The position numbers and the translations under genes were made by a program. Shown here one piece after another: positions 3,520-48,299 of a stretch of 64,000 nt of DNA. The notes under the pieces were generated by a model. It saw only the letters and a list, made by a program, of their open reading frames with translations, did not search any database and was not told the origin of the DNA. Numbering within the stretch: position 1 is the stretch's first letter; each line of letters starts with the position of its first letter. This DNA is from Mizuhopecten yessoensis (lineage: Eukaryota): NCBI RefSeq assembly GCF_002113885.1, contig NW_018406060.1, positions 1 to 64,000 of the forward strand, written 5' to 3'.

Positions 3520-3665
3520 GTTAAAGATAACACACAATATCAGCCTAGGGTTCAACAGTCTGGCCCACGGCGAAGACAAGGTCAGGAAGATACAAACATA
3601 ACTAGCAATGTCTACCTGTAAACACCTGGAAGTTTAAACTGGAAGAGACCTGAAGCATAACAGGT
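3520..3665 (+). promoter_or_regulatory. Putative promoter/non-coding first exon module A of TRIM-like gene 1; splice donor cag|gtatgt at 3663/3664
   Basis: Motif tacctgtaaacacctggaag...actggaagag...cag|gtatgttt recurs upstream of paralogues (4908-4966, 8159-8205, 15197-15256, 32698-32757, and on the minus strand near 24130-24192 and 24880-24905). Exon status is inferred. Confidence 0.55.
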
Positions 3666-4814
3666 ATGTTTGTAATGTGTTACTGTTGTTGGTGGAGGTG
3701 TTGATTTCGTACTACTTACATGATACAATATATCCATGTCTGACATTAGCAAAAATATATTTTATAGACACAAACAATGTTATAACTTACATATATTGGC
3801 CATATATTGTGACTGGGTGGTATACAAATCAAAAGTAGATCAGGCCGGCAGGTACAAAGATAAAACAGATAACACAGTTACTGCTCATACAATATAACAT
3901 TTACTCTGTAAGCATACTAGTGAGAATTACCTGAATTATGTTGTACTCAAGAATAGTCGAAAGGAAACATTCAAAAGATTTGCACTTATTTACATAATGC
4001 AATGTGATTAACAACAGCGTAATTAACCATACCATTCGTTTCATGGGAACCTTGATAATTCGTTCATGGATTTTCAATGCACACTATCAATGAAAATATG
4101 TAGCTATATCATTACTACGTGGTAAGTAGGGAACCGTTGAATATCAAGTGTTGACTAAAACATGAAACATTCGTTTCCAGCATGAGTCACAGTTAAAGCT
4201 AACACAAACTATCTACCTGGCGTACAAAAGGCAAGATTTCGGACATTTTACAACATGCAAATCAAGGATACGTGCATACAAAGAAACTTTTGCTAAAATA
4301 AGCGGTGCATCTCTTTGTCGTTTCTCTGTCTTTACAGACTCGTGTCTTGCACATTCAGCACATAGTTCACAAGCCTATTTAAAAATTGTCTAATATATGT
4401 TTTTTAGATTCTTAGAGTAACTTGACTCAGTAAGTTTTTAAGTCTTTTTCAAAAATATGTCTCAGTTTTCGTTCACGCTCATATATGATACATGTGATTT
4501 AAAAACAAAACTTTTTTTTATAAAATACGAATTATTTCAAATGTATGTATTGTCTTATTGAAATATATATATATTAAGACTTTCTCCAAACTCAGATTCA
4601 CAGTTCATTAATTTTGTGCACACACTAACGCCCCCATTTAAGGTATCTAAAGCAGTCCTTTTTTAAAAAATAATCTCAACAAGTGCTTATTTGCGATTCC
4701 GAATTTTTACCCTTTTAATAATTATCAGTCCATATTTAATCGTAGAAGATATAAAGGACCTCTCATATACTGTTGAATGAAGTACTGACTAGGCAGATCC
4801 AGCATGTGTCACAA

Positions 4815-4966
4815 ATAAAAGATAACATGCAATGTCAAACTAGGGTACAAAGGGTAGGGACAAGACAAAGGCAAGTTCAGGTAGATACAAAGTAACTATG
4901 TCTCTTTACCTGTAAGCATGTGGAAGCTTTAACTGGAAGAGAGGGGGACACTACATCAATAAAGGT
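4815..4966 (+). promoter_or_regulatory. Putative promoter/non-coding first exon module B (tandem duplicate of module A); donor aag|gtttgt at 4964/4965
   Basis: ~3520-4170 and ~4815-5450 align; both contain ataacttaca(t)rtattggccatatattgtgactgggtggtataca. Confidence 0.5.
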
Positions 4967-5720
4967 TTGTTTGTAATTTATTGTTGGTGGTGTTCATGTT
5001 CATAATGTATTATTTATGTGTGAGATATATTCAATGATAACAACATTGCTATAACTTACATGTATTGGCCATATATTGTGACTGGGTGGTATACAAGTCC
5101 GAAATACATCTGGGCAGGTACACAGATAAAGCAGATAGCACAGTTATTGATGCAATTCGGTCATCATACAATTTATTTAATTTGTAAGCTTACTAGTGAA
5201 CTTACCTCTTTTATTTTGCACGTGACGGTAACGAACAGGAAAAGTTCTGAAGATTTTCACTTATTTACGTATGCGATGTTATTAACAACAGCGTAATACC
5301 AAATAACATAATTTGTATGCACACCTTGTCCACCCGCTCAGCGATTCTGAGTGCACATTATTCAATGAATATATGTAGCTGTATAATTACTACAGGGTAA
5401 GTTGAAAATTATTAAATACCAAGTGTTCATTTCAACGTTAAACGTTCAGTATATATAATTTCCTTCAAAAGTTGTGATGATGTAATTACTTACTTTTTAA
5501 TTTCGTTACAGAAATCATGCTGATAACTCACAGTAAGCTGATCATCACAGTAAGGATTATAGACTAAAGGTGATCCCTGTATTAAGAAACGTCAGTAACC
5601 ATCACAGGCTGTGAGGCCCACGTCATTTGTGTATTATGAGAGGCCAGTAACATTCAGTAGGTGGAATCTCACCCATCGCATGTCTGTTAACATATATAGA
5701 TAATGCTAAAACTAGCAAAA

Positions 5721-7304
5721 ATGGCAGAAAAGGCGATTTCTTTCTATAAAGGACAGATAGTGGTTCGCAGCCAGGATCAAACTAGATGTGTACACCACAA
5801 AAGCGAGATCTTGGATTGGTTTTGTGAGACATGTTATGACGTCATATGTGCCAAATGTGTGTCCACTTCACACAAAGGTCATGACAATATCCTACTTAGT
5901 GAAGTTACTCTCGACAACAAACGTAAGATAAAATCATTCATAAATGAAACGGAGCAAAAAGAGCTGATTGGAATTCAACAGGAAATCATTTCAACACAGC
6001 ACAGTCTGGATGAAGACTTGAACCATTTCGAGAGTGTAGCGGAAGAAGTAAAAGAGCAAGGGGAGAAACTTAAGAAGGATATTGATGTTTTGATATCAGA
6101 AACACTATCTCGGTTGAAACATCTAGAAGAAGAAAATACTAAACTGCTCACCAGTTACAGCACTGAACTTGAGAAAATACTAGCAGACCTAAAGGAACAA
6201 CTAACACACTGTAAGGAAACTCTTCAGACAGGCACAGATATCCAGGTGTTTAACCTTTCAAAAGGACTTCAGACAAATATCACCTTACCTGAAAAACCAA
6301 AGTTAGGTTCTGCCAAATTCACCCCAAACAACAGAAGGAATATAATCTTGAAGGAGGCATTTGGAAAAGTTTCCCTGAGACCATCGGAACAGTCTCAGTC
6401 CACTACCGGCCCTGACCAGTCAGATGAAACATCAGTTGATGATAACCCGCTACCTTCCGGACATCAACAATCAGTTAAAGGGAGCACTGACACAGGTCAA
6501 TACCAGAAGAGGGTTCTTCCTCCTCAGATTAAGATTATATCAGAATGGGAATCGCCATGTCGAATAAATGCTATGTGTCCCAAAAGTGGTGGCGGCGTTT
6601 GGACAAGTCCCGGGTCCAAAATGACCCACCTAAACTGTCAAGGAGAGATACAGCAGGAGATAAAGAGTCCTGTCTACATCAACGATATCACTTTATCCCC
6701 TACTACACACAACCTCTGGGCATGTTCTTCAGGTAAACTGACCCGCAGATTCAAAACAAAGGATAAACCCCGATGTCTGTGTATTACAAGAGATGGATAT
6801 ATTCTTGTGGGAACAAAACACAGAATTACCGAGTACACTCCAGAAGGGAAGCCCGGTATCGCCACCAAAACATATTTGTTCAAGAAACCGAAGGTACGTT
6901 CACCACAGAGTATATCACAATGTCCAATCAATGACAATGTCGCTGTCGTTGATAGAGATGATGCAGATGATGGTGGCAAGGACAAACCAACAGTCATAGT
7001 GCTGGACAGACAACTACAGCAGTTATACAGGTATGGAGAATCACAACATTACAGCGGATCTATGTCTCTAGCTTTTCGTCCCTGGGATGTAACGTACGAC
7101 AGTCTAGGGTTGCTGGTGATAGCTGACCTTGCCAACAAAGGCCTACATCTGCTGAGTGGCGATGGACAATACCTGCGACTGTTATATACTGACCTAGCAT
7201 GTCCCTTGGCTGTATTGGTAGACACGGAGGGAGTTCTGTGGGCGGTGTTTGGTTTATCTAACACTGATCAAAAGGTGAAACGTCTACAGTACACAAGTGT
7301 TTGA
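5721..7304 (+). CDS. RING-less TRIM-like protein (B-box2, coiled coil, NHL-like beta-propeller), copy 1, ~527 aa
   Basis: B-box2 motif CVHHKSEILDWFCETCYDVICAKCVSTSHKGH; heptad-rich helical region; NHL-like blades (PWDVTYDSLGLLVIADLANKGLHLLSGDGQYL). Start placed at MAEKA, which aligns with the paralogue starts (in-frame ATG also at 5703). Putative acceptor ttcgttacag at 5511. Confidence 0.9.
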   Translation: MAEKAISFYKGQIVVRSQDQTRCVHHKSEILDWFCETCYDVICAKCVSTSHKGHDNILLSEVTLDNKRKIKSFINETEQKELIGIQQEIISTQHSLDEDLNHFESVAEEVKEQGEKLKKDIDVLISETLSRLKHLEEENTKLLTSYSTELEKILADLKEQLTHCKETLQTGTDIQVFNLSKGLQTNITLPEKPKLGSAKFTPNNRRNIILKEAFGKVSLRPSEQSQSTTGPDQSDETSVDDNPLPSGHQQSVKGSTDTGQYQKRVLPPQIKIISEWESPCRINAMCPKSGGGVWTSPGSKMTHLNCQGEIQQEIKSPVYINDITLSPTTHNLWACSSGKLTRRFKTKDKPRCLCITRDGYILVGTKHRITEYTPEGKPGIATKTYLFKKPKVRSPQSISQCPINDNVAVVDRDDADDGGKDKPTVIVLDRQLQQLYRYGESQHYSGSMSLAFRPWDVTYDSLGLLVIADLANKGLHLLSGDGQYLRLLYTDLACPLAVLVDTEGVLWAVFGLSNTDQKVKRLQYTSV

Positions 7305-8390
7305 AGCAGACTATATTTGTTATTACATTTACGAGTAGTACAAAGGTCGAACATTATCAACTCAAGTGTCGCATTAAACAATTAGTTCCTCTATATTTGA
7401 AAGAATTAGTTAAATTATCCTGCAAATACTGTCTTTAATGATGTGATAACTAACATTAACACTTCCCAACGAAGTTTTGTTATGATTTTGAATGAAAAGA
7501 TAAATAATAACAATCTATGACCTTTAAATTTTGACATATATAAGTGTATACATATATTGGTAATCAATCGATTGGATAAATCAAGTATAATTACTTGGTA
7601 TCAATTCAACCCATTCTCTCCTTTTGTCGAATTCCATCTGTTTCAAAGTATAATTCAAACCATGTAAATCGTCTATTAATATTGTTGTATTTCCCACATT
7701 CCCGAAGGGCAATTGAACCTATGCTATGCCGTGGCGCAGAATCTGTCGTCTGATACCTTTTCTTTGAACAACCTGTTTTTCCTAAATAACGGAAAGGCTT
7801 TGGCTTTGTAGAATTTGATTAACTACCGAAACTAAATCTATTTTTTATTCCGTGCTTATATTAAGTTTGTTATGCCACAGTTCTTCAGAACATCTTTGTT
7901 AAATAACCAATAAAAAGAACTTTTCATACATAATAAATAGCTAGCAAGAAATAGGTGGTATCCCATTGTGAAAGACAACGGTGTACACATCAGGGGCTTG
8001 TTGCCTTACAATGCTGTAGATAAGTATATAAGGGTAACATTGAGGACAGGGAAGTAGAGCTAAATCAACTGTGCAAACAACTTCTTTTATAAAGCATTAA
8101 GGTACATGTAGGTACATGTATAACTTTGGCCGGGTAAACACAGATGGCCAGATATGTGTACCTGTAATCACCTGGCAGAGAAGACAAACTTTCTGCATTA
8201 CAGTTATGTTGATAATTTGTTGCTATTGCTGGTGATGGTGTTTTGCTTTTGTGTGAAATGTATTCATGCTAATTTTATCAATGAAACCATACGCGTTTTG
8301 CCGGGAAATCGTACAAGTACAGGGGGGCATCTTGGTAGAGAAAAACAAGGCACAAACTGTAAGGAAAGTCTAAAATGAATATAGGAAGGT

Positions 8391-9481
8391 TTTTAGGTCA
8401 CCTGAGCTTTAGCTCAATTGACCTATTGCTATCCGTCTTCGTGCGTCGTCGTCCGTCGTCCGTCGTGCGACGTCCGTTAACATTTTACATTTTCAACTTA
8501 GGCTGAAATACTGGCAAAGGGATTTCATTAATATTTCATGGGAAGGTTACTGACCACTCCCTGAACAAGTGTTGTTATTTTTCGGGTCGATCAGAAATCC
8601 AATATGAACTGAAACTTTGTAGGAATAATCGACTCAAGGTCCTGACAAAGTGTTGTTATTTTTGGGTCGATCAGAAATCAAATATGGCCGCCACGGCCGC
8701 CATTTTGAAAACTATTTCAAACTTAAAGTCAAGTTCTGCTAGGCCGATTGAACTGACAATTGGTTGGAATGATCGACTCATGATCCTGACAAAGCGTTGT
8801 TATTTTTCGGGTCTATCAAAAATCCAATATTGCTGCCACAGCCGCCATTTTGAAAAACTATTTCAAAATTAAAGTCAAGTTCTGCTAGGCCGATTGAACT
8901 GACACTTGGTTGGAATGATCGACTCATGATCCTGACAAAGCGTTGTTATTTTTCGGGTCTATCAGAAATCCAATATGGGCGCCACGGCCGCCATTTTGAA
9001 AAACTATTTCAAAATTAAAGTCAAGTTCTGCTAGGACGATTGAACTGACACTTGGTTGGAATGATCGACTCATGATCCTGACAAAGCGTTGTTGTTTTTC
9101 GGGTCTATCAGAAATCCAATATTGCTGCCCCAGCCGCCATTTTGAAAAACTATTTCAAACTTAAAGTCAAGTTCTGCTAGGCCGATTGAACTGACACTTG
9201 GTAGGAATGATCGACTCATGGTCCTGACAAAGTTTTGTTATTTTTCAGGTCGATCAGAAACAGAATTTGGCTGCCATGGCCGCTATTTTGAAAATACCTA
9301 TTTCAAAGTTCTTATAGGCCGATCTAACTGAAAATCGGTCTAGGAATGATCAGCTCATGGTCCTGACAAACTTAAGTTAACGTTATACTTAACATTTTTT
9401 ACTCAAATTGGTACATATTTTAACAACAAAAATAAATACTGTAGGAATCAGGTGACCGTTAAGGCCCATGGGCCTCTTGTT
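8391..9481 (+). mobile_element. Non-autonomous Helentron-associated element (HINE/DINE-1/pearl-like) with internal ~146-bp tandem repeats
   Basis: 5' ttttaggtcacctga, (cgtc) microsatellite, ~5 tandem units (ccgccattttg at 8697, 8842, 8988, 9134), 3' tcaggtgacc plus palindrome aggcccatgggcct and cttgtt. Empty site in paralogous DNA near 32940-32985. Confidence 0.85.
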
Positions 9482-10702: not shown

Positions 10703-11155
10703 CGCTAGTTTAATAGACTGAAGTACAAATTTAGGTCATTGTTTGGGAAATAAAGGCAAAATGTATTATATGATAATTGAATGAGCAGAGATAAAATATC
10801 AATTGACTATCGCATAATTTTTCTGATTTTTCAAAATTTCATTTTGATATGTTTAAACAGGATAAATTGTATTCTATTATAGGTGATTGTAAAACACTAA
10901 TAGTCATTTGTTTAATTTCAAACGAAAGCAGTTTTATACTGAAGTATGTGTTAATTATGTGAGATTGTTAATCCAAAGTTGTCTGCCTTTAGGAAACCTT
11001 AACAGAGATAGGTCTTACATGTACCTGGTAAGGACAAATAATAGTAAAAGTAATCATGATAATAGTGCATTGTCCCCTTTCTCTTCTCCCCATCCCCAAT
11101 ACCTTACATATCCTTCTAGTTTTGCCTTGGCCCTAGCCAGGAGGCTATGTGGCTC

Positions 11156-11370
11156 TAACGAACAATAGTTTAGGGCACCTGGTGATGGCTGACTATGCCA
11201 ACAAATGCTTCCTACTGCTGAGTGGTGATGGACAGTATCTGCGACTGCTACATACTGACATAGGCAGACCTTGGGCTTTATGTGTGGACACGTAGGAAGT
11301 CCTGTGGGCGGTGTTTGGTACATATGGCACTGCAAAAAATGTGTAACGTCTCCAGTACACAAGTGTTTAA
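11156..11370 (+). pseudogene. C-terminal remnant of a TRIM-like NHL gene (last blades) with in-frame stops; degraded upstream module at ~7980-10320
   Basis: Aligns to 3' end of paralogues (ctgctgagtggtgatggacagtatctgcgactg ... cagtacacaagtgtttaa); GAG>TAG and AAA>TAA changes; upstream donor mutated to cag|ttatgt at 8203. Confidence 0.85.
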
Positions 11371-16648: not shown

Positions 16649-16972
16649 ATGTAGCTACGGGCGTCAACTTTTCACCAGCGATTACTAGAGAACTTTACAT
16701 GTCCAGTGTCAAGGTCTATAAAACTAATCACAATCTTCTGAAGATTAAATGTTCAGTGCATACACATTTGGGATATTTGGGATAATTTAATGACATCGTT
16801 TCTATTTTTGTTACAGAAAATTCACAGAAAGCTTATAATCACAGTTGGGAGTAAAGCCTAAAGATAGTCATTTTATCACATAAGTTTCATAACGTTCCGT
16901 TTCTTTTGTCTTGACATATATATAGCATAATGATAGTAATGTAATGCAATACCTCAGTAATAGTGTAGTGAA

Positions 16973-17893
16973 ATGGCAGAAAAGGCGATTTCTTTCTATA
17001 AAGGCCAGATAGTGGTTCGCGGCACGGATCAAACTACATGCATGCACCACAAAGGCGAGACTTTGGATTGGTTTTGTGAGACATGTTATGAGGTCATATG
17101 TGCCAAATGTGCGTCCAATTCACACAAAGGTAATGACAATATCCTACTAAGCGAAATTACTCCCGACAACAAACGTAAGATAAAATCATTTATAAATAAA
17201 ATCGAGAATACAGATTTAATTGAAATTCAACTGGGAATCAGTTCATCGCAGCAGAGTCTGGATGATGACTTAAACAATTTCAAGAGTATAGCAGAGGAAG
17301 TAAAAAAGCAAGGGGAGAAACTTAAGGAGGATATTGATGTTTTGATAGCGGAAACACTTTCTCAGGTGAAACATTTAGAAGAAGAAAATACTAAACTTCT
17401 CACCAGTTTCAAGTCTGAACTCGATAAAAAAAACAATCAGACCTAAAGGAACAACTGAGACACTGTAAGGAAACTCTTCAGACAGGCACAGATATCCAGG
17501 TGTTTGACCTTTCAAAAGGACTTCAAACAAACATCAACTTACCTGAAAAACCAAAGTTGGTTCTGCGGCTGCATCCCAAACAACAGAAGGAATACAATCC
17601 TGAAGGAGGCATTTGGAAAAGTTTCCTTGAGACCATCGAACAGTCTCAGTCCTCTACCGGCCCTGACCAGTCAGATGAAACATCAGTTGATGATAACCCG
17701 CTACCTTCCGGACATCAACAATCAATTAAAGGGGGCACAGGCACAGGCACAGGCACAGGTCACGCGACAGTTATATACTGATATAGACCTACCCTTTGTT
17801 GTATGTGTTGACACGGAGGGAGTTCTGTGGGCGGTGTTTGGTTTATCCAACATTGATCAAAAGGTTAAACGTCTACAGTACACAAGTGTTTAA
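16973..17893 (+). pseudogene. TRIM-like copy 2: frameshifted, with ~700-bp deletion of most of the propeller; first ORF (16973-17446) encodes B-box + partial coiled coil, 157 aa
   Basis: Frameshift at A-run ~17426-17433, further indels at ~17556 and ~17637; junction (ggcaca)4 ggtcac|gcgacagttatatactgat at ~17764 joins the linker to the last blade. Confidence 0.9.
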
Positions 17894-22063: not shown

Positions 22064-23532
22064 TTAAACATTGTGTACTGTAGTCATTTTACTGTTTGAT
22101 ACGACAAACCGCCCACAGAACTCCCTCCGTGTCTACACATATAGTCCAAGGCCTGTTTTTGTCAGTATGTGGCAGTCGCAGGTATTGGTCATCACCATTC
22201 AAGAGATGGAGGCAGCAGTTAGCAAAGTCAGAAATCACCAGGAATCCTAGACTGTCATACTTTACATCCCAGGATCGATGTTTCCATAACTAAATAATTC
22301 CTGAAGCTTTCTGTCCAGCACTATAACTTCTCTGTTTTCTTTTCCACCATTACCTGTCCGATCTTCATCAACTACGGCGATATTGTTGTTGAGGGGACAC
22401 TGTGCTTTTCTTAATGGTGAACACACCATCGGTTTCCAGAAAAAATATGTTTTGGTGGCGATAACGGGCTTCCCTTTCAGAGTGTATTCGGCGATTCTGT
22501 GTTTTGTTCCCACAAGTATATGTTCATCTCTTGTAACACAGAGACATCGGGGTACATCCTTTGTTTTGAATCTGCGGGTCAGTTCACCTGATATCAGCTC
22601 CATGACACTGTTATCCGACGTAGAACATACCCAGAGGTTGTGTGTAGTAGGGGAAAAACTGATATCTTCGATGTGAACAAGACTCTTTATCTCCTGTTGT
22701 ATCTCTCCTTGACTGTTTAGGGTGGTCACTTTGAATCCGCAATCTGTCCACACGCCACCACCAATTTTGAGACACATAGCATTTATTTGACATGTAGATT
22801 CCCATTCTGATAAAATCTTTATCTGAGGAAGAAGGATTTTCTCTCGGTCTTGACCTGTGCCTGTGCTCCATTTATCTGATTGCTTATGTCGGATGAAACT
22901 TTTCCAAATGCCTCCTTCATGATCATATTCCTCCTGTTGTTTGGGATGAAGTCGGCAAAACCTAAAGTTGGTTTTTCAGGTGTGATGATGTTTGTCTGGA
23001 GTCCTTTTGAAAGGTCAAACACCTGGATATCTGTGCCCGTCTGAAGAGTTTCCTTGCAGTGGTTAAGTTGTTCTTTTAGGTCTGCGAGGTTTTCTCGAGT
23101 TCAGTCTTATAACTAGTGAGGACTCTTCTAAATGTTTCAACTGAGAAACTGTTTCCGCTATCAAAACATCAATATTCTCCTTTAGTTTTCCCCCTTGCTT
23201 TTTACCTCTTCCGCTACTCTCTCAAAATGGTTCAAGTTTTCATCCAGATTGTGCTGTGAAGAATTGATTTCCTGTTGAATTTCAATTAGCGCGTTTTGCT
23301 CCGTTTTATTTATGAATGTTTGTATCTTACGTTTGTTGTTAGGTGTAACTTCACTCAGTAAGACAATATCATGACCTTTGTGTGAAGTGGACACACATTT
23401 GGCACATATGACGTCATCACATGTCTCACAAAACCAATCCAAAGTCTCACTTTTGTGGTGTACACATGTAGTTTGATCCTAGCCGCGAACCACTATCTGT
23501 CCTTTGTAGAAAGAAATCGCATTTTCTGCCAT
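22064..23532 (-). pseudogene. TRIM-like copy 3 (inverted), multiply disrupted
   Basis: ATG at 23532 (MAENAISFYKGQ); CAG>TAG at 23479-23481; frameshifts split the protein into ORFs 23182-23442, 22819-23022, 22262-22777; deletions in linker and late blades. Confidence 0.92.
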
Positions 23533-23591
23533 TTCAGCTAGTTATTTCTAAGGCAGGACATCAACCAATTAGTTTTATCTATATATCATTA

Positions 23592-23664
23592 CAAAGTAAG
23601 TCACAAATTTTGAAGGAAATTATAAATACTGAACGTTTCACGTTTCATTGAACACTTGGTATTT
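23592..23664. repeat. Left arm of a perfect 73-bp inverted repeat (right arm 25238-25310)
   Basis: Reverse complement compared base by base: aaataccaagtgttcaatgaaacgtgaaacgttcagtatttataatttccttcaaaatttgtgacttactttg. Confidence 0.92.
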
Positions 23665-25237
23665 AATGATTTTCAGCTTACCCTATAGTAATAATACAGC
23701 TACATATTTTCTTTAAATGATATGCGTTCAGTATCAATGAACGGTTGGACAAGATGCGCATACAAAATGTTATATTGTATTAAGCTGTTAGTAATAACAT
23801 CGCATTTGTAAATAAGTGAAAATCTTTGCCTGTTCGTTTCCCTCAAGTGCAATATAATGGAGGTAATTTCACTAGTAAGCTTACAAATTAAATATCATAT
23901 TATATGATGACCAAATTGCAGCAGTAACTGTGCTATCTGCTTTATCTGTGTACTTGCCCAGATGTGTTTTGGACTTGTATACCACCCAGTCACAATATAT
24001 GGCCAATATACGTAAGTTATAGCAATGTTGTTATCAATAGAATATAATTCTGTTAAGGTGAGAATTGAATATATCTCACACATCAATAATACATTATGAA
24101 CATGAACACCGCCAACAATAAATTACAAACAAACCTTTATTGATGTAGTTTCCCCCTTTCTACTAGTTAAAGCTTTCACATGCTTACAGGTAAAGAGACA
24201 TAGTTACTTTGTATCTACCTGAACTTGCCATTGCCTTGTCCCTATCTTTGTACCCTAGTTTGACATAGCATGCTATCTTTTATTTGTGACACATGCTGGA
24301 TCTGCCTGGTCAGTAACCTCATTCAACAGTATATGAGAGGTCCTTTATATCTTCTACGATTAAAAAAGTGTTGTTGTTTTTTTGGGTCAATATTTCAGTT
24401 CAGATAGAAATAAAAGAAAACGGGTTTTAAAACAGACATACTAATGCGAACTGGAAAATAATATCAGTGTCCTCTATTTTATGAACAACACTCGCCTTGT
24501 AGAAAAGCAACATTAACAAAAACAAAAAGGATATTGACAAGAATTCACATGTATCATACATGAGCGTGAGAGACCTATTTGAAAAAGACTTAAAAGCTTA
24601 ATGAGTCAAGATACTTTGAGAATCTATAAAACATATATTAGACCATTTTTAAATAGGCTTGTGAACTATGGGATGAATGTGCAAGACACGAGGCTGTAAA
24701 GACAGAGAAACGACAAAGAAATGCTACGCTTATTTTAGCAAAAGTTTCTTTGTAAGCTCGTATCCTTGATTTGCATGTTGTAAAATGTCCGAAATCTTGC
24801 CTTTTGTAAGCCAGGTAGATATTGTGTGTTATCTTTAACTGTGACCCATGCTGGAAACGAAAGGTCCCTTTCAGTTTAAAAGTTCATGTGTTTACAGGTA
24901 GACATTCCTAGTTATCTTGGTATCTTCCGGACCTTGTCTTCGCCGTGGTCGAGTCTGTTGAATTCTAGGTTGATATTGTGTGTTATCTTTACTTGTTTAA
25001 GATGCATGTAATTCATACCTAGACTGCTACTTGCGGCTACTCTTCCTATGTGATGTAAATCATTTCTTCATAATTGATGACATATGATACTGCAAAGACA
25101 TTGTGATTTGAATAATGTGGGTTACAGCAAATGAAATTCACAATTTTTCCAACCTACATTTACTTAAGAGTTTCGAATATGTCAAGCACACTACATTACA
25201 GCACCAAAAAATTACGATATCTGTCTTATGCAGTGTA
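23665..25237 (-). promoter_or_regulatory. Inverted copy of the gene-1 upstream region (~3335-5415), carrying module B and an internally deleted module A
   Basis: Reverse-complement matches, e.g. 24330-24360 vs 4738-4770, 24660-24860 vs 4170-4375, 25185-25232 vs 3330-3375. Confidence 0.85.
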
Positions 25238-25563
25238 AAATACCAAGTGTTCAATGAAACGTGAAACGTTCAGTATTTATAATTTCCTTCAAAATTTGTG
25301 ACTTACTTTGCAATTTTGTTACAGAATCCATGCTGATAACTCACAGTAAGCTGATCATCACAGAAGGGATTATAGACTAAAGATGATCCCTGTATCAAGA
25401 AAGGTCAGTAACATTCACTTGCCGGGATGTGAGGCCCCCGTCATTTGTGTATTACGAGAGGTCAGTAACATTCACTAGGTGGGGTTTCCCCCATCGCCTG
25501 TCTGTTAGCATATATAGATAATACTAATTGGTTGATGTCCTGCCTAAGAAATAACTAGCTGAA

Positions 25564-27171
25564 ATGGCAGAAAAGGCGATTTCTTTCTATAAAGGACAGA
25601 TAGCGGTTCGCGGCCAGGATCAAACCAAATGTGTACACCACAAAGGCGAGTCTTTGGATTGGTTTTGTGAGACATGTTATGACGTCATATGTGCCAAATG
25701 TGTGTCCACTTCACACAAAGGTCATGACAATATCCTACTTAGCGAAGCTACTCCCGACAACAAACGTAAGATAAAATCATTTATATATGAAACGGAGCAA
25801 AAAGAGCTGGTTGAAATTCAACTAAAAATCAGTTCAACACAGCATAGTCTGGATGAACACTTGAACCATTTCAAGAGTGTAGCAGAAGAAGTAAAAATGC
25901 AAGGGGAGAAACTTAAGGAGGATATTGATGTTTTGATAGCGGAAACACTAGCTCAGGTGAAACATTTAGAAGTAGAAAATACTAAACTGCTCACCAGTTA
26001 CAAGAATGAACTCGAGAAAAAACTAGCAGACCTAAAGGAACAACTGAAACATTGTAAGGAAACTCTTCAGACAGGCACAGATATCCAGGTGTTTGACCTT
26101 TCAAAAGGACTTCAGACAAACATCATCTTACCTGAAAAACCAAAGTTAGGTTCTGGCGACTTCACCCCAAACAACAGAAGGAATACAATCCTGAAGGAGG
26201 CATTTGGAAAACTTTCCCTGAGACCATCGGAACAGTCTCAGTCCTCCACTGGCCCTGACCAGTCAGATGAAACACCAGTTGATGATAACCCGCTACCTTC
26301 CGGACATCAACAATCAGTTAAACGGAGCACAGACACAGATAAAGACCCGGAGAAGGCCCTTCTTCCTCAGATTAAGATTATATCAGAATGGTCTCCAGAT
26401 ATGATTACCAAAATATGTCCAAAACATGGTGGCGGCGTGTGGACAAGTGACGGGTACAAAGGGATCCACCTAAACAGTCAAGGAGAGATACAGCAGGAGA
26501 TAAAGAGTCCTGTCTACATCTCATATATCACTTTATCCCCTACTACACACAACCTCTGGGCATGTTCTACTTCAGATAAGAGTGTCTTGGAGCTGACATC
26601 AGGTAAACTGACCCGCAGATTCAAAACAAAGGATAAACCCCGATGTCTGTGTATTACAAGAGATGAACATATTCTTGTGGGAACAAAACATAAAATTACC
26701 GAATACACTCCGGAAGGGAATCCCGGTATCGGCACCAAAACATATTTGTTGAAGAAACCGATGGTGTGTTCACCACAGAGTATATCACAATGTCCAATCA
26801 ATGACAATGTCGCTGTCGTTGATAGCGATCTTACAGATGATGGTGGTCAGGACAATCCAGCAGTCATAGTGTTAGACAGAAAACTTAAGGAGATATACAG
26901 GTATAAAGAATCACAACATTACAGCGGATCTACGTCTCTACTTTTCCCCTATGATGTAACATACGACAGTCTAGGATTCCTGGTAATAGCTGACTTCGCC
27001 AACAGAGGCATACATCTGCTGAGTGGTGATGGACAATATCTGCGACAGTTATATACTGATATAGACCTACCCTTTGTTGTATGTGTTGACACGGAGGGAG
27101 TTCTGTGGGCGGTGTTTGGTTTATCCAACACTAATCAAAAGGTTAAACGTCTACAGTACACAAGTGTTTAA
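25564..27171 (+). CDS. RING-less TRIM-like protein (B-box2, coiled coil, NHL-like propeller), copy 4, 535 aa
   Basis: Intact ORF, same domain motifs, closely similar to copy 1; putative acceptors ttttgttacag (25324) and ctgcctaag (~25548). Confidence 0.9.
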   Translation: MAEKAISFYKGQIAVRGQDQTKCVHHKGESLDWFCETCYDVICAKCVSTSHKGHDNILLSEATPDNKRKIKSFIYETEQKELVEIQLKISSTQHSLDEHLNHFKSVAEEVKMQGEKLKEDIDVLIAETLAQVKHLEVENTKLLTSYKNELEKKLADLKEQLKHCKETLQTGTDIQVFDLSKGLQTNIILPEKPKLGSGDFTPNNRRNTILKEAFGKLSLRPSEQSQSSTGPDQSDETPVDDNPLPSGHQQSVKRSTDTDKDPEKALLPQIKIISEWSPDMITKICPKHGGGVWTSDGYKGIHLNSQGEIQQEIKSPVYISYITLSPTTHNLWACSTSDKSVLELTSGKLTRRFKTKDKPRCLCITRDEHILVGTKHKITEYTPEGNPGIGTKTYLLKKPMVCSPQSISQCPINDNVAVVDSDLTDDGGQDNPAVIVLDRKLKEIYRYKESQHYSGSTSLLFPYDVTYDSLGFLVIADFANRGIHLLSGDGQYLRQLYTDIDLPFVVCVDTEGVLWAVFGLSNTNQKVKRLQYTSV

Positions 27172-33968: not shown

Positions 33969-35384
33969 ATGGCAGAAAATGCGATTTCGTTCTATAAAGG
34001 ACAGATAGCTGTTCGCGGGAAGAGTCAAACTACATGTGTATATCACAAAAGCGAAACTTTGGACTTGTTTTGTGAGACTTGTAATGACGTCATCTGTGCC
34101 AAGTGTGTGTCCACTTCACACAAAGATCATGACACTACCCTACTACGCGAAGTTACTCCAGCCAACAAACGTAAGATCAAAACATTTATAAATGAAACGG
34201 AGCAGAAGAAGCTGATTGAAATTCAACAGGAAATCAATTCTACACAGGACAGTCTGGATAAACACTTGAACGATTCTGAGAGTGTTGCAGAAGAGGTAAG
34301 CACGCAAGGAGTGACACGTAGGGCCCTCACCAGTTACAAGACTGAACTCGGGAAAACACTTGCAAACCTTAAAGAGCAACTAAAGCAATGTAAGAAAACT
34401 CTACAGACTGGCACGGATATCCAGGTGTTTGACCTGGAAAAAGAACTTCAGACCACTAACACCTGCCTTGACAAAACATATGCAGGTTCTGCCTTATTCG
34501 TCCCATACAACAGAAGAAATGAAATCCTGGGTGCTGCATTTGAAAAAGTAACCACCCCACCATCTGGACACATGAAGATTCTATCAGAATGGAACTATCA
34601 GGGTAACATAACACCCATATGTCCCAAAAGTGGCGGTAGTGTGTGGATAAATAACATCTGCAAAGTAACCCACCTTAACAGCCAAGGAACTATGGAGCAG
34701 CAGATGCACACGTTTGGCTTGGCCAGAGATATCTCTGTATCCCCCTCTACACACAATCTATGGATATGTTGTGATTATGATAAAAATATTACGGAGCTGA
34801 TACATGCATCAGGTGTACTGAACCATGTATTCAGCACAAAGGATGAACCCCGATGTCTGTGTGTTAGAAAGGATGAACATATCCTTGTGGGAACAAAACA
34901 CAAAATCACCGAGTACACTCTAGGAGGGGAGCCCGTTATCACTACCAAAACATCATTTTTCAGAAAACCAATAGTGTGTTCACCACAGAGGATATCACAA
35001 TGCCCAATCAACTACAATGTCGCTGTAGTTGATAGAGATCAGAAAGGAGATGGTGGTAAGGACAAACCTGTAGTCATTGTGTTGGACAGACAGCTTAAGC
35101 AATTATACAGGTATGGAGAATCACAACACAACAGTGGCACTGATTTGTGGAGTTTTGATCCCTATGATGTAACGTACGACAGTTTAGGACACCTGGTGAT
35201 TGCGGACTATACAAACAAACACCTCCATCTGCTGAGTGGTGATGGACAATACCTGCGACTGCTGCATACCGACATAGACAGTCCCCGGGCTGTATGTGTT
35301 GATACGGAAGGAGTTCTTTGGGCCGTTTTGGAAGCAGTCTACAATAACGGAAATGTGAAACGTCTACAGTTCACAAATGCTTAA
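33969..35384 (+). CDS. RING-less TRIM-like protein, copy 5, 471 aa, with shortened coiled coil and no S/T/P linker
   Basis: Intact ORF with B-box2 (CVYHKSETLDLFCETCNDVICAKCVSTSHKDH) and NHL-like blades; in-frame deletions relative to copies 1, 4 and 6. Confidence 0.85.
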   Translation: MAENAISFYKGQIAVRGKSQTTCVYHKSETLDLFCETCNDVICAKCVSTSHKDHDTTLLREVTPANKRKIKTFINETEQKKLIEIQQEINSTQDSLDKHLNDSESVAEEVSTQGVTRRALTSYKTELGKTLANLKEQLKQCKKTLQTGTDIQVFDLEKELQTTNTCLDKTYAGSALFVPYNRRNEILGAAFEKVTTPPSGHMKILSEWNYQGNITPICPKSGGSVWINNICKVTHLNSQGTMEQQMHTFGLARDISVSPSTHNLWICCDYDKNITELIHASGVLNHVFSTKDEPRCLCVRKDEHILVGTKHKITEYTLGGEPVITTKTSFFRKPIVCSPQRISQCPINYNVAVVDRDQKGDGGKDKPVVIVLDRQLKQLYRYGESQHNSGTDLWSFDPYDVTYDSLGHLVIADYTNKHLHLLSGDGQYLRLLHTDIDSPRAVCVDTEGVLWAVLEAVYNNGNVKRLQFTNA

Positions 35385-35459: not shown

Positions 35460-35584
35460 CTGCTGCACACTGACATAGAAAGTCCCCGGGTTGTATGTGT
35501 TGACACGGAGGGAGCTCTGTGGCCATTGATTGGTTAATTCGGCTCTGATCAAAAGGTGAAACGTGTATAGTGCACTATGTTTAA
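35460..35584 (+). pseudogene. Orphan duplicate of the last propeller blade/C-terminus, with stops
   Basis: Translates LLHTDIESPRVVCVDTEGALWPLIG*FGSDQKVKRV*; followed by the family-type 3' flank. Confidence 0.85.
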
Positions 35585-38151: not shown

Positions 38152-39358
38152 CTTCAACTTCAACTTCAATGTTTTACTCGACAAAAACCATGTATGGTCA
38201 TCACGTCAAGGGTGACTATGTACATCCGTGCAGTGTGGAGCCTTTGTGCGGTTAAAACTATATACAATCGGAAAAGTCTATTCCACCTCTCCCCTGACTG
38301 CCGCCTTGAAGGCGTCCAGGTCCTCGATGCTGGCGACGCTGGGTGGCAGGAGGTTCCATGTTGTGATGGTGCGGGGGATAAAAGAATGTCTGTATGCGTT
38401 GGTTGCCATATGCGGAGTGTAGAGTTTGTAGGGGTGGCTGTTCCTTGTTGTTGTGACGGTGGAGTAGGTAGGATGGTAGTTGGTTGGTACTGCTATGTGG
38501 TGGTGTAGAATCTTGTGCATAAATATGATGTCCGTTATCTTGCGTCTGTGTTCCAATGTATTCCATCTGAGGTCCTTTATCATCTGTGTAGTGCTGTCAG
38601 GTTTGTTGTAGTTGAGGGGCTTTTTTAGTACGAATCTTGCTGCGTTTTTCTGTATCTGTTCTATCCTGTTGATGTGTTGGGTTGTGTGTGGATTCCAGGC
38701 TGTGGTGCTGTATTCTAGTTTTGGTCTGACAAGGCTTTTGTATGCTCTCTCTTTTACTTGTTGTGGGCAGTGTCTTAAATTCCTCTTCAAAAATCCTAGT
38801 GTTCTGTTGGCTTTGCTGATGGTGTTGTCTATGTGTGTGTTGAATTTGAAGTTGCTTGCTAATTCTACTCCTAGGTATGGGTGGTGCTCTACTATTTCTA
38901 ATGTCTGTCCCTTCATCTGGTAGTTGTAGTGTTGTGTTGTATTCTTGTTGGTGGCTTGCATAATGGCATATTTATTCACGTTAAACTCCATCTGCCAGGT
39001 GTCTGCCCATTGACACAGTGTGTTGAGGTCGCGTTGTAGTTTCTCGTGGTCTTCANTATCTGTCAAAAAGTTGCCAATCCATTTCTGTGTGGTCCCCTGT
39101 ATCCCGTAGTGGTGTAGTTTTGATGAGAGTCGTTGGTGTGCGACTTTGTCGAATGCCTTGGCGAAGTCTAGAATTGCAATGTCTACTTGTGTCTTGTTGT
39201 TGTTGATGTGCTGAGTGATGTCGTCTGTGGTGAGGAATAGTTGTGATTCGCAGGAGCGTTTTCTTCGGAAGCCGTGTTGATTTTCGTGTAGTATGTTCTG
39301 TCTGTCTAGGTGGTCCATTATCTGCGAAACTATGATGTGTTCTAGCATCTTTGAGGGT
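38152..39358 (-). mobile_element. 5'-truncated CR1/L2-group LINE (reverse transcriptase 3' part), middle lost in a contig join
   Basis: NQHGFRRKRSCESQL, LDFAKAFDKV, WQMEFNVNK, YLGV, SFIPRTITTWNLLP motifs; (ttgaag)n tail; N at 39056 replaces the QG/YADD region. Confidence 0.9.
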
Positions 39359-46500: not shown

Positions 46501-46658
46501 TATCTGAACGCCAAAATGGTGTATGTGTGTGAAAGGTATAATTTTGTGATTTTTAATAATGTTATAATCTTATTCATAGGATGAATGCTGATCAATAAGG
46601 ATGAACAGTATTTCATCATGAGATAGCGGCTTTCACCAGGTGAGTGTCCCCATCACAA

Positions 46659-48299
46659 ATGGCAGAAAAGGCTTCCTCTTTCTACAAGGGACAGATAGCT
46701 GTCCGTGACCTGGGTCGGACGACATGCACACACCACAAAGGAAATATTTTAGACTGGGTTTGTGAGACATGCTGTGATGCAATATGTGCTAAGTGTGTAT
46801 CGTCTTTACACAAGGGCCATGACATCGTTCACCTGAGCGAAACTACTGCTGACAACAAACGGAAGATAAAAATATTCATTGATGAAGTCGGCCAGAAAGA
46901 GTTGAGACAAATTCAACAGGAAATAATTTCTACCCGGGAAAGTCTTGAAAATGATTTGAGTCATTTTGAGAGTGTGAGAAGAGAAATGAAAGAGCAAGGT
47001 GAAACACTAAAGGAATATATTGATGTTTTGATGGCCCGAACGCTTTCTCACATTAAACAACTAGAAGATGAAAATGCTAACCTTCTCAAGAATTACAGGA
47101 TAGATCTCGAACAGAAACTTGCTGAACTAAAGGACCAACTGAAACATTGTAATGAAGCCCTTAAAACTGGCACAGATATCCAGGTGTTTGACTTTGTCTT
47201 TAGACTACAGACCAACATTACACTACATGCAGCACCCATCCTTGCTTCCGCCGTGTTCAGCCCTAATGTCAAGAGCAAAGTAATGCTGGAGCAGGCATAT
47301 GGAAAAGTAATCGTTGACAAATCTGGACAAAGTGAAGATCAGTCTACATGTCAACAGGATATCGACTCTGACCAATCACAAGAAACACCAGATCATCAAG
47401 TTCAAGTTCCTCCACTGCAACAATCCAAGAAGGAGAGTCCACAGATGAAAATCAATCAGCTACCACTGTCCGCACTTCTGGCACAGAGTACAGTGCTTTC
47501 AGAATCGATAGTTTCTTCGGAAATTGAGTCTATCTGCCCAACTTGTAATGATGGTGCATGGACGAGTGGACGGATAAGTAACATTGTGACACACCTGACC
47601 AGTCAAGGAGGCGTACATCAGAAGATACAGAGTCATGTTCCGGTTACAGATATCTGTATTTCCCCCTCTACACACAACCTCTGGGCATGCTCTAACAAAG
47701 AATACAATGTCATGGAGTTGACATTAGGTACACTGATCAGTAGGTTCAAAACCACAGATGAACCTAGATGTCTGTGTGTTACTAAAGATGACTGTGTCCT
47801 TGTTGGGTCAAAACACAAAATCACTGAGTACACTAAGGAAGGGAAGAAAGGCCTCGTCAGCAGAACATACCTGTATTTCATGTGGAATCCATTGCTAAAG
47901 TCACCATGGCGGATGTCACAATGTCCAGTCAGCAAGAATATTGCAGCAGTTGACATGGATCTGGCAGATGATGGCGGTAAGGGAGAACCAGCTGTTATAG
48001 TCCTGAACAAACGTCTAAAAGAATTATTCAGGTATGGACGACCAAACCACATCATCAAGTGTGAATCAGGAAAGTTTTGTGCCGCGGATGTAGCTTACGA
48101 TAGCTTGGGACAGCTGGTGATTGCTGACACTGTCAACAGCCTACACCTACTTAGCGGTGATGGACAGTACCTGCGAATGCTGCATACGGACATAGCAAGG
48201 CCATGGGTTCTTTGTGTGGACAGGGAAGGAGTTCTGTGGGCAGGGTTTGGCAGATTCAGAGTTGAGAAAGTGAAACGCCTACTGTACACCAATTTTTAA
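46659..48299 (+). CDS. RING-less TRIM-like protein, copy 6 (most divergent), ~546 aa
   Basis: Intact ORF from ATG 46659 (MAEKASSFYKGQ); B-box2 CTHHKGNILDWVCETCCDAICAKCVSSLHKGH; Q/S/P-rich linker; NHL-like blades; putative acceptor ttattcatag at 46579. Confidence 0.9.
   Translation: MAEKASSFYKGQIAVRDLGRTTCTHHKGNILDWVCETCCDAICAKCVSSLHKGHDIVHLSETTADNKRKIKIFIDEVGQKELRQIQQEIISTRESLENDLSHFESVRREMKEQGETLKEYIDVLMARTLSHIKQLEDENANLLKNYRIDLEQKLAELKDQLKHCNEALKTGTDIQVFDFVFRLQTNITLHAAPILASAVFSPNVKSKVMLEQAYGKVIVDKSGQSEDQSTCQQDIDSDQSQETPDHQVQVPPLQQSKKESPQMKINQLPLSALLAQSTVLSESIVSSEIESICPTCNDGAWTSGRISNIVTHLTSQGGVHQKIQSHVPVTDICISPSTHNLWACSNKEYNVMELTLGTLISRFKTTDEPRCLCVTKDDCVLVGSKHKITEYTKEGKKGLVSRTYLYFMWNPLLKSPWRMSQCPVSKNIAAVDMDLADDGGKGEPAVIVLNKRLKELFRYGRPNHIIKCESGKFCAADVAYDSLGQLVIADTVNSLHLLSGDGQYLRMLHTDIARPWVLCVDREGVLWAGFGRFRVEKVKRLLYTNF

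What the first reader, a model, noticed from the sequence alone, without database searches (positions are those of the whole stretch)
6541..7300. Paralogue differences cluster in predicted top-face loops of the propeller
Copies 1 and 4 are nearly identical over long stretches, yet differ in multi-residue patches around the start of blades: ESPCRINAMCP / SPDMITKICP / NYQGNITPICP / VSSEIESICP; YINDI / YISYI / LARDI / PVTDI; LAFRPWDV / LLFPYDV / WSFDPYDV / KFCAADV; LACPLAV / IDLPFVV / IDSPRAV / IARPWVL; also TSPGSKM / TSDGYKG / INNICKV. In NHL propellers residues around the x-P-x-x-I/V motif form the ligand-binding face (established for Brat and LIN-41). Inference: diversifying selection on a binding surface.
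Basis: partly seen in the sequence, partly recalled or inferred. Interest (0 to 1): 0.72.

Follow-up and report, generated by a model that had tools for sequence, protein, structure and literature searches.

The report
Scallop NHL propeller genes, hypervariable binding face
A tandem family of scallop genes encodes RING-less B-box/coiled-coil/NHL-propeller proteins whose amino-acid differences are concentrated, by positive selection, in the loops of one face of the propeller, the pattern expected of a diversified set of intracellular recognition proteins.

Summary
The window (Yesso scallop, Mizuhopecten yessoensis or a very close relative) carries a tandem array of single-coding-exon B-box + coiled-coil + six-bladed NHL propeller genes. 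Four are intact (5703, 25564, 33969, 46644) and at least four are decayed.

All quoted peptide patches exist. All lie in the D-to-A or B-to-C loops, which by blade topology share one ("top") face.

- **Enrichment:** amino-acid differences are about 3-fold enriched in top loops. Synonymous differences are not.
- **Site models (my own GY94 code):** neutrality is rejected for nine paralogues (M2a vs M1a 2dlnL 38.5; M8 vs M8a 37.8; omega about 3-4 at 9-12% of codons), and for the four window copies alone (24.5).
- **Robustness:** the signal survives dropping copy 1, gap-free columns and per-blade trees.
- **Control:** the B-box/coiled-coil region gives no signal.
- **Location:** 23 of 30 candidate sites are in top loops and 4 more sit at the top ends of strands.
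- **Replication:** an independent subfamily repeats the result (41.4; 13 of 30 sites shared).

It lacks a blade-2 strand, and frameshift and C49Y alleles were seen.

The ligand is unknown. This scan already noted the same phenomenon on another piece of this genome (s1-519437).

The parts
5703..7304 (+). c1: intact ORF of 533 aa (B-box, coiled coil, linker, NHL propeller). The conserved start MAEKA is at 5721.
   Evidence: ORF list. Pfam zf-B_box E 2e-8. In-frame stops upstream.
5787..5885 (+). c1 B-box zinc finger (residues 29-61). A C49Y allele was seen in RNA contigs at 5848.
6519..7301 (+). c1 six-bladed NHL propeller.
   Evidence: AlphaFold pLDDT 89, pTM 0.89. The c2 model matches TRIM3/TRIM2/Thin/Brat/Lin41 NHL domains at TM 0.77-0.79.
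6552..6575 (+). Patch SPCRINAM: D6-A1 top loop and start of strand A1. Selected sites 16, 17, 19, 20 (c2-propeller numbering).
6606..6626 (+). Patch SPGSKMT: B1-C1 top hairpin. Selected sites 33-35. A P303H allele was seen at 6610.
6672..6689 (+). Patch VYINDI: D1-A2 top loop. Selected sites 55 and 57.
6726..6731 (+). Junction of a 30-nt (10-aa) deletion private to c1. It removes the B2-C2 loop and strand C of blade 2.
   Evidence: The c1 model has no C2/D2 strands.
6951..6989 (+). B4-C4 top loop (DRDDADDGGKDKP). Selected sites 160-162.
7062..7088 (+). Patch MSLAFRPWD: D4-A5 top loop. Selected sites 197 and 200.
7191..7214 (+). Patch DLACPLAV: D5-A6 top loop and start of strand A6. Site 241. 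An L498I allele was seen at 7194.
7251..7271 (+). B6-C6 top loop (GLSNTDQ). Site 258.
3664..5511 (+). 5'UTR intron of the c1 transcript (GT..AG). Exon 2 runs from 5512 to about 8416 and holds the whole coding sequence.
   Evidence: Spliced contig in run X1, an alternative donor at 4962 in X7, and contigs starting at 5510-5511 in X3 and X9.
25564..27171 (+). c2: intact paralogue of 535 aa, the closest to c1. Its propeller is identical in protein to a gene in GCA_002113885.2.
33969..35384 (+). c3: intact paralogue of 471 aa with a shorter coiled coil and linker.
46644..48299 (+). c4: intact paralogue of 551 aa as listed, the most divergent. The conserved ATG start (MAEKA) lies a few codons into the listed ORF.
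22107..23541 (-). Near full-length pseudogene copy with stops and frameshifts and its own patch variants.
16967..17890 (+). Decayed copy: N-terminal half with stops, fused to a c2-like C-terminal 42 codons.
11155..11367 (+). Fragment of the last two blades, with stops.
35460..35567 (+). Short blade-6 fragment just downstream of c3.

Best explanation
**What it is.** The interval is the C-terminal six-bladed NHL beta-propeller of one member of a tandem, birth-and-death array of RING-less B-box/coiled-coil/NHL genes in a scallop.

**What is shown.**
- After duplication, the paralogues kept the scaffold and the bottom face under purifying selection.
- The top-face loops took repeated amino-acid replacements (omega about 3-6 at about 10% of codons). 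These are the D-to-A loops carrying the S/x-P-x-x-[IV] motif, mainly the two residues after the proline, and the B-to-C hairpins.
- The same positions are hit in two separate subfamilies.
- c1 is transcribed as a spliced mRNA.

**What is inferred.**
- The top face is the ligand-binding surface, as in Brat, LIN-41 and Mei-P26.
- Each paralogue has its own specificity.
- The B-box and coiled coil dimerise or assemble the protein.
- The proteins are cytosolic, since there is no signal peptide.
- The family acts as a germline-encoded repertoire that recognises fast-evolving ligands, most plausibly viral or transposon RNA or protein.

c1 is probably drifting out of function.
For: **Fold**
- AlphaFold pLDDT 87-89 with 6 x 4 strands.
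- Foldseek matches TRIM3/TRIM2/Thin/Brat/Lin41 NHL domains at TM 0.77-0.79.
- HMM hits to TRIM71, TRIM2 and TRIM3 NHL domains.

**Selection**
- Nine paralogues: M2a-M1a 38.5, M8-M7 47.5, M8-M8a 37.8.
- Four window copies alone: 24.5. A bootstrap of 25 replicates under M1a gave a maximum of 7.4.
- Closest five: 17.3.
- Without c1: 32.6.
- Gap-free columns: 17.1. Per-blade trees sum to 37.5.
- B-box/coiled-coil control: 0.0.

**Location**
- 23 of 30 sites are in top loops, 4 at the top ends of strands and 2 in bottom loops (Fisher p 3e-8).
- Column entropy is higher in top loops than in bottom loops, and bottom loops equal strands. This also holds in proteins not used for the codon test. Spearman correlation between posterior and independent entropy is 0.50.

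**Not an age mosaic**
- Synonymous differences at codons with the same amino acid are not enriched in top loops (p 0.3-1.0).
- Patch strings are private to each copy.

**Replicate subfamily**
- 2dlnL 41.4, omega 6.1, 24 of 30 sites in top loops, 13 of 30 sites shared with the first clade against 3.3 expected.

**Literature**
- RNA binding on the NHL top surface is reported in PMC9070667 and PMC5908797.

**Transcription**
- Spliced contigs in 4 runs from 4 studies.
Against: - No ligand or function is known for any member.
- Net charge of the top loops ranges from -4 to +8. There is no uniform basic RNA-binding face as in Brat or LIN-41.
- As a whole class, top loops have omega of only 0.5-1.35 by pairwise counting.
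- Paralogues recombine: PHI p<=0.001 over the whole gene, and the N-terminal and propeller trees disagree. Recombination can inflate such tests.
- The excess of multi-nucleotide codon changes could partly reflect clustered mutation.
- 'Top face' is inferred from strand topology, not measured on coordinates.
- Blades 3-4 give no signal in the window's clade.
- c1 itself looks relaxed.
Confidence: 0.78

Rival explanations
1. Relaxed constraint only. The top loops are simply free to vary (omega about 1), and the apparent omega above 1 comes from model misfit, multi-nucleotide mutations or alignment noise in loops.
For: - Class-wide omega of top loops is 0.5-1.35.
- There is an excess of codons with 2-3 nucleotide changes.
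- Several variable loops carry indels.
- c1 is clearly relaxed.
Against: - M8 beats M8a (omega fixed at 1) by 37.8 in one clade and 41.3 in another.
- The signal survives removal of all columns within 2 positions of a gap (17.1).
- Bottom loops, equally exposed, are as conserved as strands.
- The test is calibrated under M1a simulation.
- The control domain gives 0.
Confidence: 0.1
2. Gene-conversion mosaic. Conversion homogenises most of the gene between neighbours, and the patches are older unconverted islands or short tracts copied from other paralogues. Site models are then misled by recombination.
For: - PHI p<=0.001 for the whole gene.
- The N-terminal tree pairs c2 with My_P4, while the propeller tree does not.
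- Identical runs of 111 and 89 nt occur between c1 and c2.
- One c2 patch is shared with the truncated copy at 17765-17890.
Against: - PHI is not significant within the propeller (0.07 and 0.12).
- Synonymous divergence at unchanged codons is not higher in the patches.
- Patch strings are otherwise unique in about 170 kb of array sequence.
- Separate trees per blade pair keep the signal.
- Even under this reading, keeping patches unconverted would need selection for diversity.
Confidence: 0.08
3. For the copy at 6541-7300 only: c1 is a transcribed gene on its way to becoming a pseudogene, so its private differences are mostly neutral decay rather than adaptation.
For: - A 10-aa deletion removes strand C of blade 2, and the model lacks the C2/D2 strands.
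- A frameshift allele at 5728 appears in two runs, and a C49Y allele at a B-box zinc ligand in two others.
- Six replacement polymorphisms against two silent ones.
- The c1 branch has omega 1.47 in the N-terminal domain against 0.31 background (p 0.012).
Against: - The reference ORF is intact and the propeller model is still confident (pLDDT 89).
- The c1 propeller branch omega of 0.97 is not significantly above background.
- The c1 patch SPCRINAM resembles those of My_P3 and My_P4, so it is inherited rather than decayed.
- This reading does not touch the family-wide result, which holds without c1.
Confidence: 0.55

Closest known systems
TRIM-NHL proteins (Brat, LIN-41/TRIM71, Mei-P26, TRIM2/3, Thin/TRIM32)
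   Same: - B-box, coiled coil and a C-terminal six-bladed NHL propeller closed by an N-terminal 'velcro' strand.
- These are the best structural matches (TM 0.77-0.79) and also give sequence hits.
- In these proteins the top surface binds the ligand, RNA (PMC9070667, PMC5908797).
   Different: - No RING and no filamin domain.
- The coding sequence is a single exon.
- The genes sit in lineage-specific tandem arrays with pseudogenes.
- Only 12-15% identity to those NHL domains.
- Top-loop charge is not uniformly basic.
- The top face is hypervariable rather than conserved.
TRIM5alpha and fish finTRIM/btr (B30.2/SPRY variable loops under positive selection)
   Same: B-box/coiled-coil scaffold, tandem lineage-specific expansion, and positive selection focused on surface loops of the C-terminal recognition domain. 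This comparison rests on my own knowledge of those families. Related papers were listed (PMC3845644, PMC3137616) but I did not read them.
   Different: The recognition domain is an NHL propeller rather than SPRY, there is no RING, and no antiviral activity has been shown.
Fungal NLR WD40 propellers (het-d/het-e, Podospora)
   Same: A beta-propeller whose ligand-face positions, a few per blade, evolve under diversifying selection within a paralogous family. These papers were listed (PMC1805685, PMC12222747) but only their abstracts were seen.
   Different: WD40 rather than NHL, and an NLR architecture. Diversity there is generated by repeat shuffling, which was not seen here.

Membership tests
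TRIM-NHL (class VII tripartite motif proteins) | N-terminal RING finger | tested here: not met
   No RING hit in Pfam for any of the four proteins. In-frame stops lie upstream of the ATG within the transcribed exon of c1 and before the c2 ATG.
TRIM-NHL (class VII tripartite motif proteins) | B-box zinc finger | tested here: met
   PF00643 with E 1e-9 to 9e-7 and 29.5-38.6 bits, against a cutoff of 24.1, in all four.
TRIM-NHL (class VII tripartite motif proteins) | Coiled coil after the B-box | tested here: inconclusive
   Only weak sub-threshold hits to helical and coiled-coil families over residues about 65-200. No dedicated coiled-coil prediction or fold was run.
TRIM-NHL (class VII tripartite motif proteins) | C-terminal six-bladed NHL propeller | tested here: met
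   AlphaFold gives 24 strands in 6 blades, pLDDT 87. Foldseek top hits are NHL domains at TM 0.77-0.79. phmmer hits TRIM71, TRIM3 and TRIM2 NHL at E 3e-8 to 9e-7. The Pfam NHL repeat reaches its cutoff only in c3 (21.7 against 20).
RNA-binding NHL domains (Brat / LIN-41 type) | Strongly basic top surface that contacts RNA | tested here: inconclusive
   Net charge of top-loop residues varies from -4 to +8 among 20 family members. No electrostatic surface could be computed and no binding data exist.
Gene families under pervasive diversifying selection (site-model criterion) | A codon class with omega above 1 that fits significantly better than nearly neutral models | tested here: met
   M2a-M1a 38.5, M8-M7 47.5, M8-M8a 37.8. 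Replicated in a second subfamily at 41.4. Null calibration. Control domain 0.0.
Gene families under pervasive diversifying selection (site-model criterion) | Signal not explained by recombination | tested here: met
   PHI within the propeller gives p 0.07 and 0.12. Per-partition trees sum to 37.5. A full GARD screen was not possible.
Restriction-factor-like TRIM repertoires (TRIM5 / finTRIM pattern) | Selected sites lie on the surface loops of the recognition domain, in a tandem lineage-specific expansion | tested here: met
   23 of 30 sites are in top loops. The array has 4 intact and at least 4 decayed copies. Relatives were found only in pectinid scallops.
Restriction-factor-like TRIM repertoires (TRIM5 / finTRIM pattern) | Demonstrated antiviral or pathogen-binding activity | not testable with these tools
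   No functional data. Literature searches found no study of this family.

The most novel reading that the evidence does not exclude
Pectinid scallops, and perhaps bivalves more widely, hold a germline-encoded repertoire of cytosolic, RING-less B-box/coiled-coil/NHL receptors. In these, the top face of an NHL propeller serves as a hypervariable recognition surface for viral or transposon RNA or protein, with about two positions per blade plus the B-C hairpins varying. This would be an NHL-based counterpart of TRIM5/finTRIM SPRY loops or fungal NLR WD40 faces.
Probability: 0.4. Interest if true: 0.7.

Novelty: new variant of a known kind. Interest (0 to 1): 0.52.

Why it matters
Diversifying selection on the recognition domain of expanded TRIM-like families is well known for SPRY/B30.2 domains in vertebrates. 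NHL propellers, by contrast, are known as conserved RNA-binding modules of developmental regulators.

A family in which the NHL top face is the hypervariable element would show that this fold can also be used as a diversified recognition surface. It would also point to a candidate intracellular recognition system in bivalves, which lack adaptive immunity and suffer viral mass mortalities.

The selected positions are few and regularly placed (P+1/P+2 of the S-P-x-x-I motif and the B-C hairpins). This gives a direct design for loop-swap and binding experiments.

Tried and rejected
- **Adjacency test.** A permutation test on adjacent differing residues was weak for most pairs (p 0.02-0.18). I used codon-level multi-hit and run-length tests instead.
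- **Pairwise NG86 omega by structural class** stayed at or below about 1.3 and was not decisive.
- **3D mapping.** Model coordinates are not exposed, so face assignment rests on strand topology. Residue-level mapping onto Brat or LIN-41 RNA contacts was not attempted, because no referenced sequences with the authors' numbering were available.
- **Standard software.** PAML and HyPhy are absent, so I wrote the site models myself. Two bootstrap attempts timed out. A sequential one gave 25 replicates.
- **Micro-conversion donors.** None were found in the window plus five loci. The rest of the genome could not be searched.
- **Rfam** found no RNA family in the window.
- **Literature.** Five searches found nothing on NHL positive selection in molluscs. 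One apparent lead matched only 'Trimmomatic'.
- **The large representative protein search** was not used, as the operators advised.

Full report
**What is in the window.** Four long ORFs on the + strand (5703-7304, 25564-27171, 33969-35384, 46644-48299) encode proteins of 471-551 aa that align end to end. I call them c1 to c4.

A tblastn of these proteins against the window finds further decayed copies:
- a near full-length pseudogene on the minus strand (22107-23541), with stops and frameshifts;
- a truncated copy (16967-17890);
- two C-terminal fragments (11155-11367 and 35460-35567).

Each intact protein has a B-box zinc finger above Pfam's cutoff. This is followed by a helical stretch with only weak coiled-coil-type hits, a low-complexity linker, and a C-terminal domain with weak NHL-repeat hits. 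No RING finger is present. For c1 and c2, in-frame stops lie just upstream of the start codon. The N-termini (MAEKAISFYKGQ...) show no signal peptide.

The closest database proteins are all from pectinid scallops, mostly Mizuhopecten yessoensis, named 'uncharacterized' or 'TRIM71-like'. Parts of the window are 99.8-99.9% identical to the M. yessoensis assembly GCA_002113885.2. The window is therefore that species or a very close relative.

The phrase 'copies 1 and 4 are nearly identical' fits c1 versus c2 if the decayed copies are counted (83% amino-acid and about 90% nucleotide identity). It does not fit c1 versus c4 (56%).

In the c1-c2 nucleotide alignment, long identical stretches alternate with short blocks in which neighbouring codons differ at several positions. 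Three tests show this exceeds chance:
- 18 codons carry two or three differences, against 10.1 expected (p 0.0016).
- The longest identical runs are 111 and 89 nt, against an expected maximum of 54 (p 0.002).
- Amino-acid differences are enriched in D-A/B-C loops (below).

A simple test on adjacency of differing residues is weak (p 0.10).

**The fold and the faces.** I aligned the propeller segments of 20 family members and predicted the c2 domain. The model has pLDDT 87, pTM 0.87 and 24 strands, that is six four-stranded blades. The N-terminal strand completes blade 6.

Foldseek's best matches are the NHL domains of TRIM3, TRIM2, Thin, Brat, Lin41 and Mei-P26 (TM 0.77-0.79, 12-15% identity). 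Sequence search hits designed NHL 'Pizza' proteins, TRIM71, TRIM3 and TRIM2.

In a four-stranded antiparallel blade, the D-to-A and B-to-C connections lie on one face, by convention the top. The A-to-B and C-to-D connections lie on the other. This gives 83 top-loop codons, 53 bottom-loop codons and 125 strand codons.

Published structures place RNA binding by Brat, Lin41 and Mei-P26 on the top surface of the NHL domain (PMC9070667; PMC5908797).

**Where the differences fall.** For every close pair, amino-acid differences are about three times more frequent in top loops than elsewhere (odds ratios 2.7-3.8, p 1e-5 to 3e-3). They are also more frequent there than in bottom loops.

Synonymous differences at codons that keep the same amino acid show no such enrichment (p 0.3-1.0). 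The patches are therefore not simply older DNA.

Column entropy over the family is much higher in top loops than in bottom loops or strands. Bottom loops are no more variable than strands. This also holds in eleven proteins that were not used in the codon analysis.

**Codon models.** PAML and HyPhy are not installed, so I wrote GY94 site models (F3x4, all branch lengths optimised). I fetched the DNA of five M. yessoensis paralogues.

Results for 272 propeller codons and nine paralogues:
- M2a beats M1a by 2dlnL 38.5 (p 4e-9).
- M8 beats M7 by 47.5.
- M8 beats M8a by 37.8.
- Omega is 3.6 at 8.5% of codons (M2a), or 2.9 at 12% (M8).

Robustness checks:

| Data set | M2a-M1a 2dlnL |
|---|---|
| Four window copies alone | 24.5 |
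| Closest five | 17.3 |
| B-box/coiled-coil control | 0.0 |
| Without c1 | 32.6 |
| Columns at least 3 positions from any gap | 17.1 |
| Blades 1-2, own tree | 27.7 |
| Blades 3-4, own tree | 1.5 |
| Blades 5-6, own tree | 8.4 |

A parametric bootstrap under M1a for the four-copy set gave a maximum of 7.4 in 25 replicates, with 4% above 5.99. The home-made test is therefore not inflated.

The PHI test finds recombination over the whole gene (p<=0.001), in line with discordant N-terminal and propeller trees. It is not significant inside the propeller (p 0.07 and 0.12).

**Where the selected sites are.** All sites with posterior above 0.95 are in top loops. In c2-propeller numbering these are 17, 34, 55, 73 and 200.

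Of the 30 sites above 0.5 under M8 (Fisher p 3e-8):
- 23 are in top loops;
- 4 are the first or second residue of an A or C strand, that is its top end;
- 2 are in bottom loops;
- 1 is in the N-terminal tail.

In the D-to-A loops the hits sit mainly at P+1 and P+2 of the proline motif. In blades 1 and 2 they also sit at P+4 and P+5.

**Replication.** I fetched five further M. yessoensis paralogues from other contigs. They belong to a subfamily only 40-45% identical to the window's copies.
- M2a beats M1a by 41.4 (p 1e-9), with omega 6.1 at 12% of codons.
- 24 of 30 candidate sites are in top loops (p 1e-8).
- 13 of the 30 coincide with sites of the first clade, where 3.3 are expected.
- In this subfamily blades 3 and 4 take part as well.

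My analysis was made before I saw it and agrees with it.

c1 is transcribed:
- A 2,959-nt contig in one run joins an upstream exon to 5512-8416 across a GT..AG intron (3664-5511).
- A second run shows another donor site.
- Two more runs, one on record as RNA-Seq, have contigs that start at the acceptor.

But c1 looks relaxed:
- It alone lacks 10 residues, the B2-C2 loop and strand C of blade 2. Its model, still confident (pLDDT 89), has no C2 or D2 strand.
- Contigs from two runs carry a 1-nt deletion at 5728 that breaks the frame at codon 9.
- Contigs from two other runs carry C49Y at a zinc ligand of the B-box.
- Six of eight coding variants are replacements.
- The c1 branch has omega 1.47 in the N-terminal domain against 0.31 elsewhere (p 0.012).

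Some of c1's private differences are therefore likely neutral. Its D6-A1 patch (SPCRINAM), however, resembles those of two other paralogues and is inherited.

**Rivals.**
- *Relaxation alone* is contradicted by the M8a tests and by the conserved bottom loops.
- *A conversion mosaic* is contradicted by the even synonymous divergence, the private patch strings and the per-partition tests. Conversion between domains does occur.
- *Clustered multi-nucleotide mutation* may add to the signal and could not be modelled.

**What it does.** This part is inference. The scaffold is that of TRIM-NHL proteins, where the coiled coil dimerises and the NHL top face binds the target.

Here the RING is missing, so any ubiquitin-ligase activity would need a partner. 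Top-loop charge ranges from -4 to +8 among members, so the ligands need not be RNA.

The family combines tandem birth-and-death, pseudogenes, probable null alleles and focused positive selection on one face. That pattern matches recognition proteins engaged with fast-evolving partners such as viruses or mobile elements.

**Novelty.** I found no paper on this family or on positive selection in NHL domains of molluscs. The principle is known from TRIM5alpha and finTRIM SPRY loops and from fungal NLR WD40 propellers. The use of the NHL top face in a RING-less family is a new variant of that kind.

Noticed in passing
L002:18150-19850 versus window 25564-27171: The GCA_002113885.2 counterpart of c2 has an identical propeller protein. 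It carries an in-frame 31-aa tandem duplication spanning the end of the B-box and the start of the coiled coil, giving 566 aa instead of 535. This could be an allelic variant or an assembly artefact.
   Followed up: partly
window 8284-9000: Just past the c1 3'UTR, RNA-run contigs pile up to depths of thousands to 74,000, with many short pieces, loose ends and internal joints. This looks like a dispersed, highly transcribed repeat. Rfam finds no known RNA family there.
   Followed up: partly
window 5703-6300 versus 6519-7301, compared with L001 and L002: The N-terminal (B-box/coiled-coil) and propeller trees disagree. c2 pairs with My_P4 in the N-terminal part but not in the propeller, and PHI is significant only across the whole gene. 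The paralogues exchange whole domains.
   Followed up: partly
window 35460-35567; 17765-17890; 11155-11367; L002:19903-20241: Short copies of the last one or two propeller blades lie just downstream of intact or decayed genes, for example 76 nt after the c3 stop. These are recurrent partial 3' duplications in the array.
   Followed up: no
window 38278-39348 (-): An ORF with a reverse-transcriptase domain (RVT_1, E 2e-13) lies between c3 and c4. It is a retroelement remnant inside the array and contains a single N.
   Followed up: partly
window 58016-58981 (+): A 321-aa ORF has a sub-threshold RING-finger match (C3HC4, E 1e-3, below cutoff) at residues 31-76. It may be a separate small RING protein gene next to a RING-less array.
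   Followed up: partly
window 23592-25310: Another first-stage note (s1-507927) reports a 73-bp perfect inverted repeat between the head-to-head pseudogene (22107-23541, -) and c2. I did not examine it.
   Followed up: no
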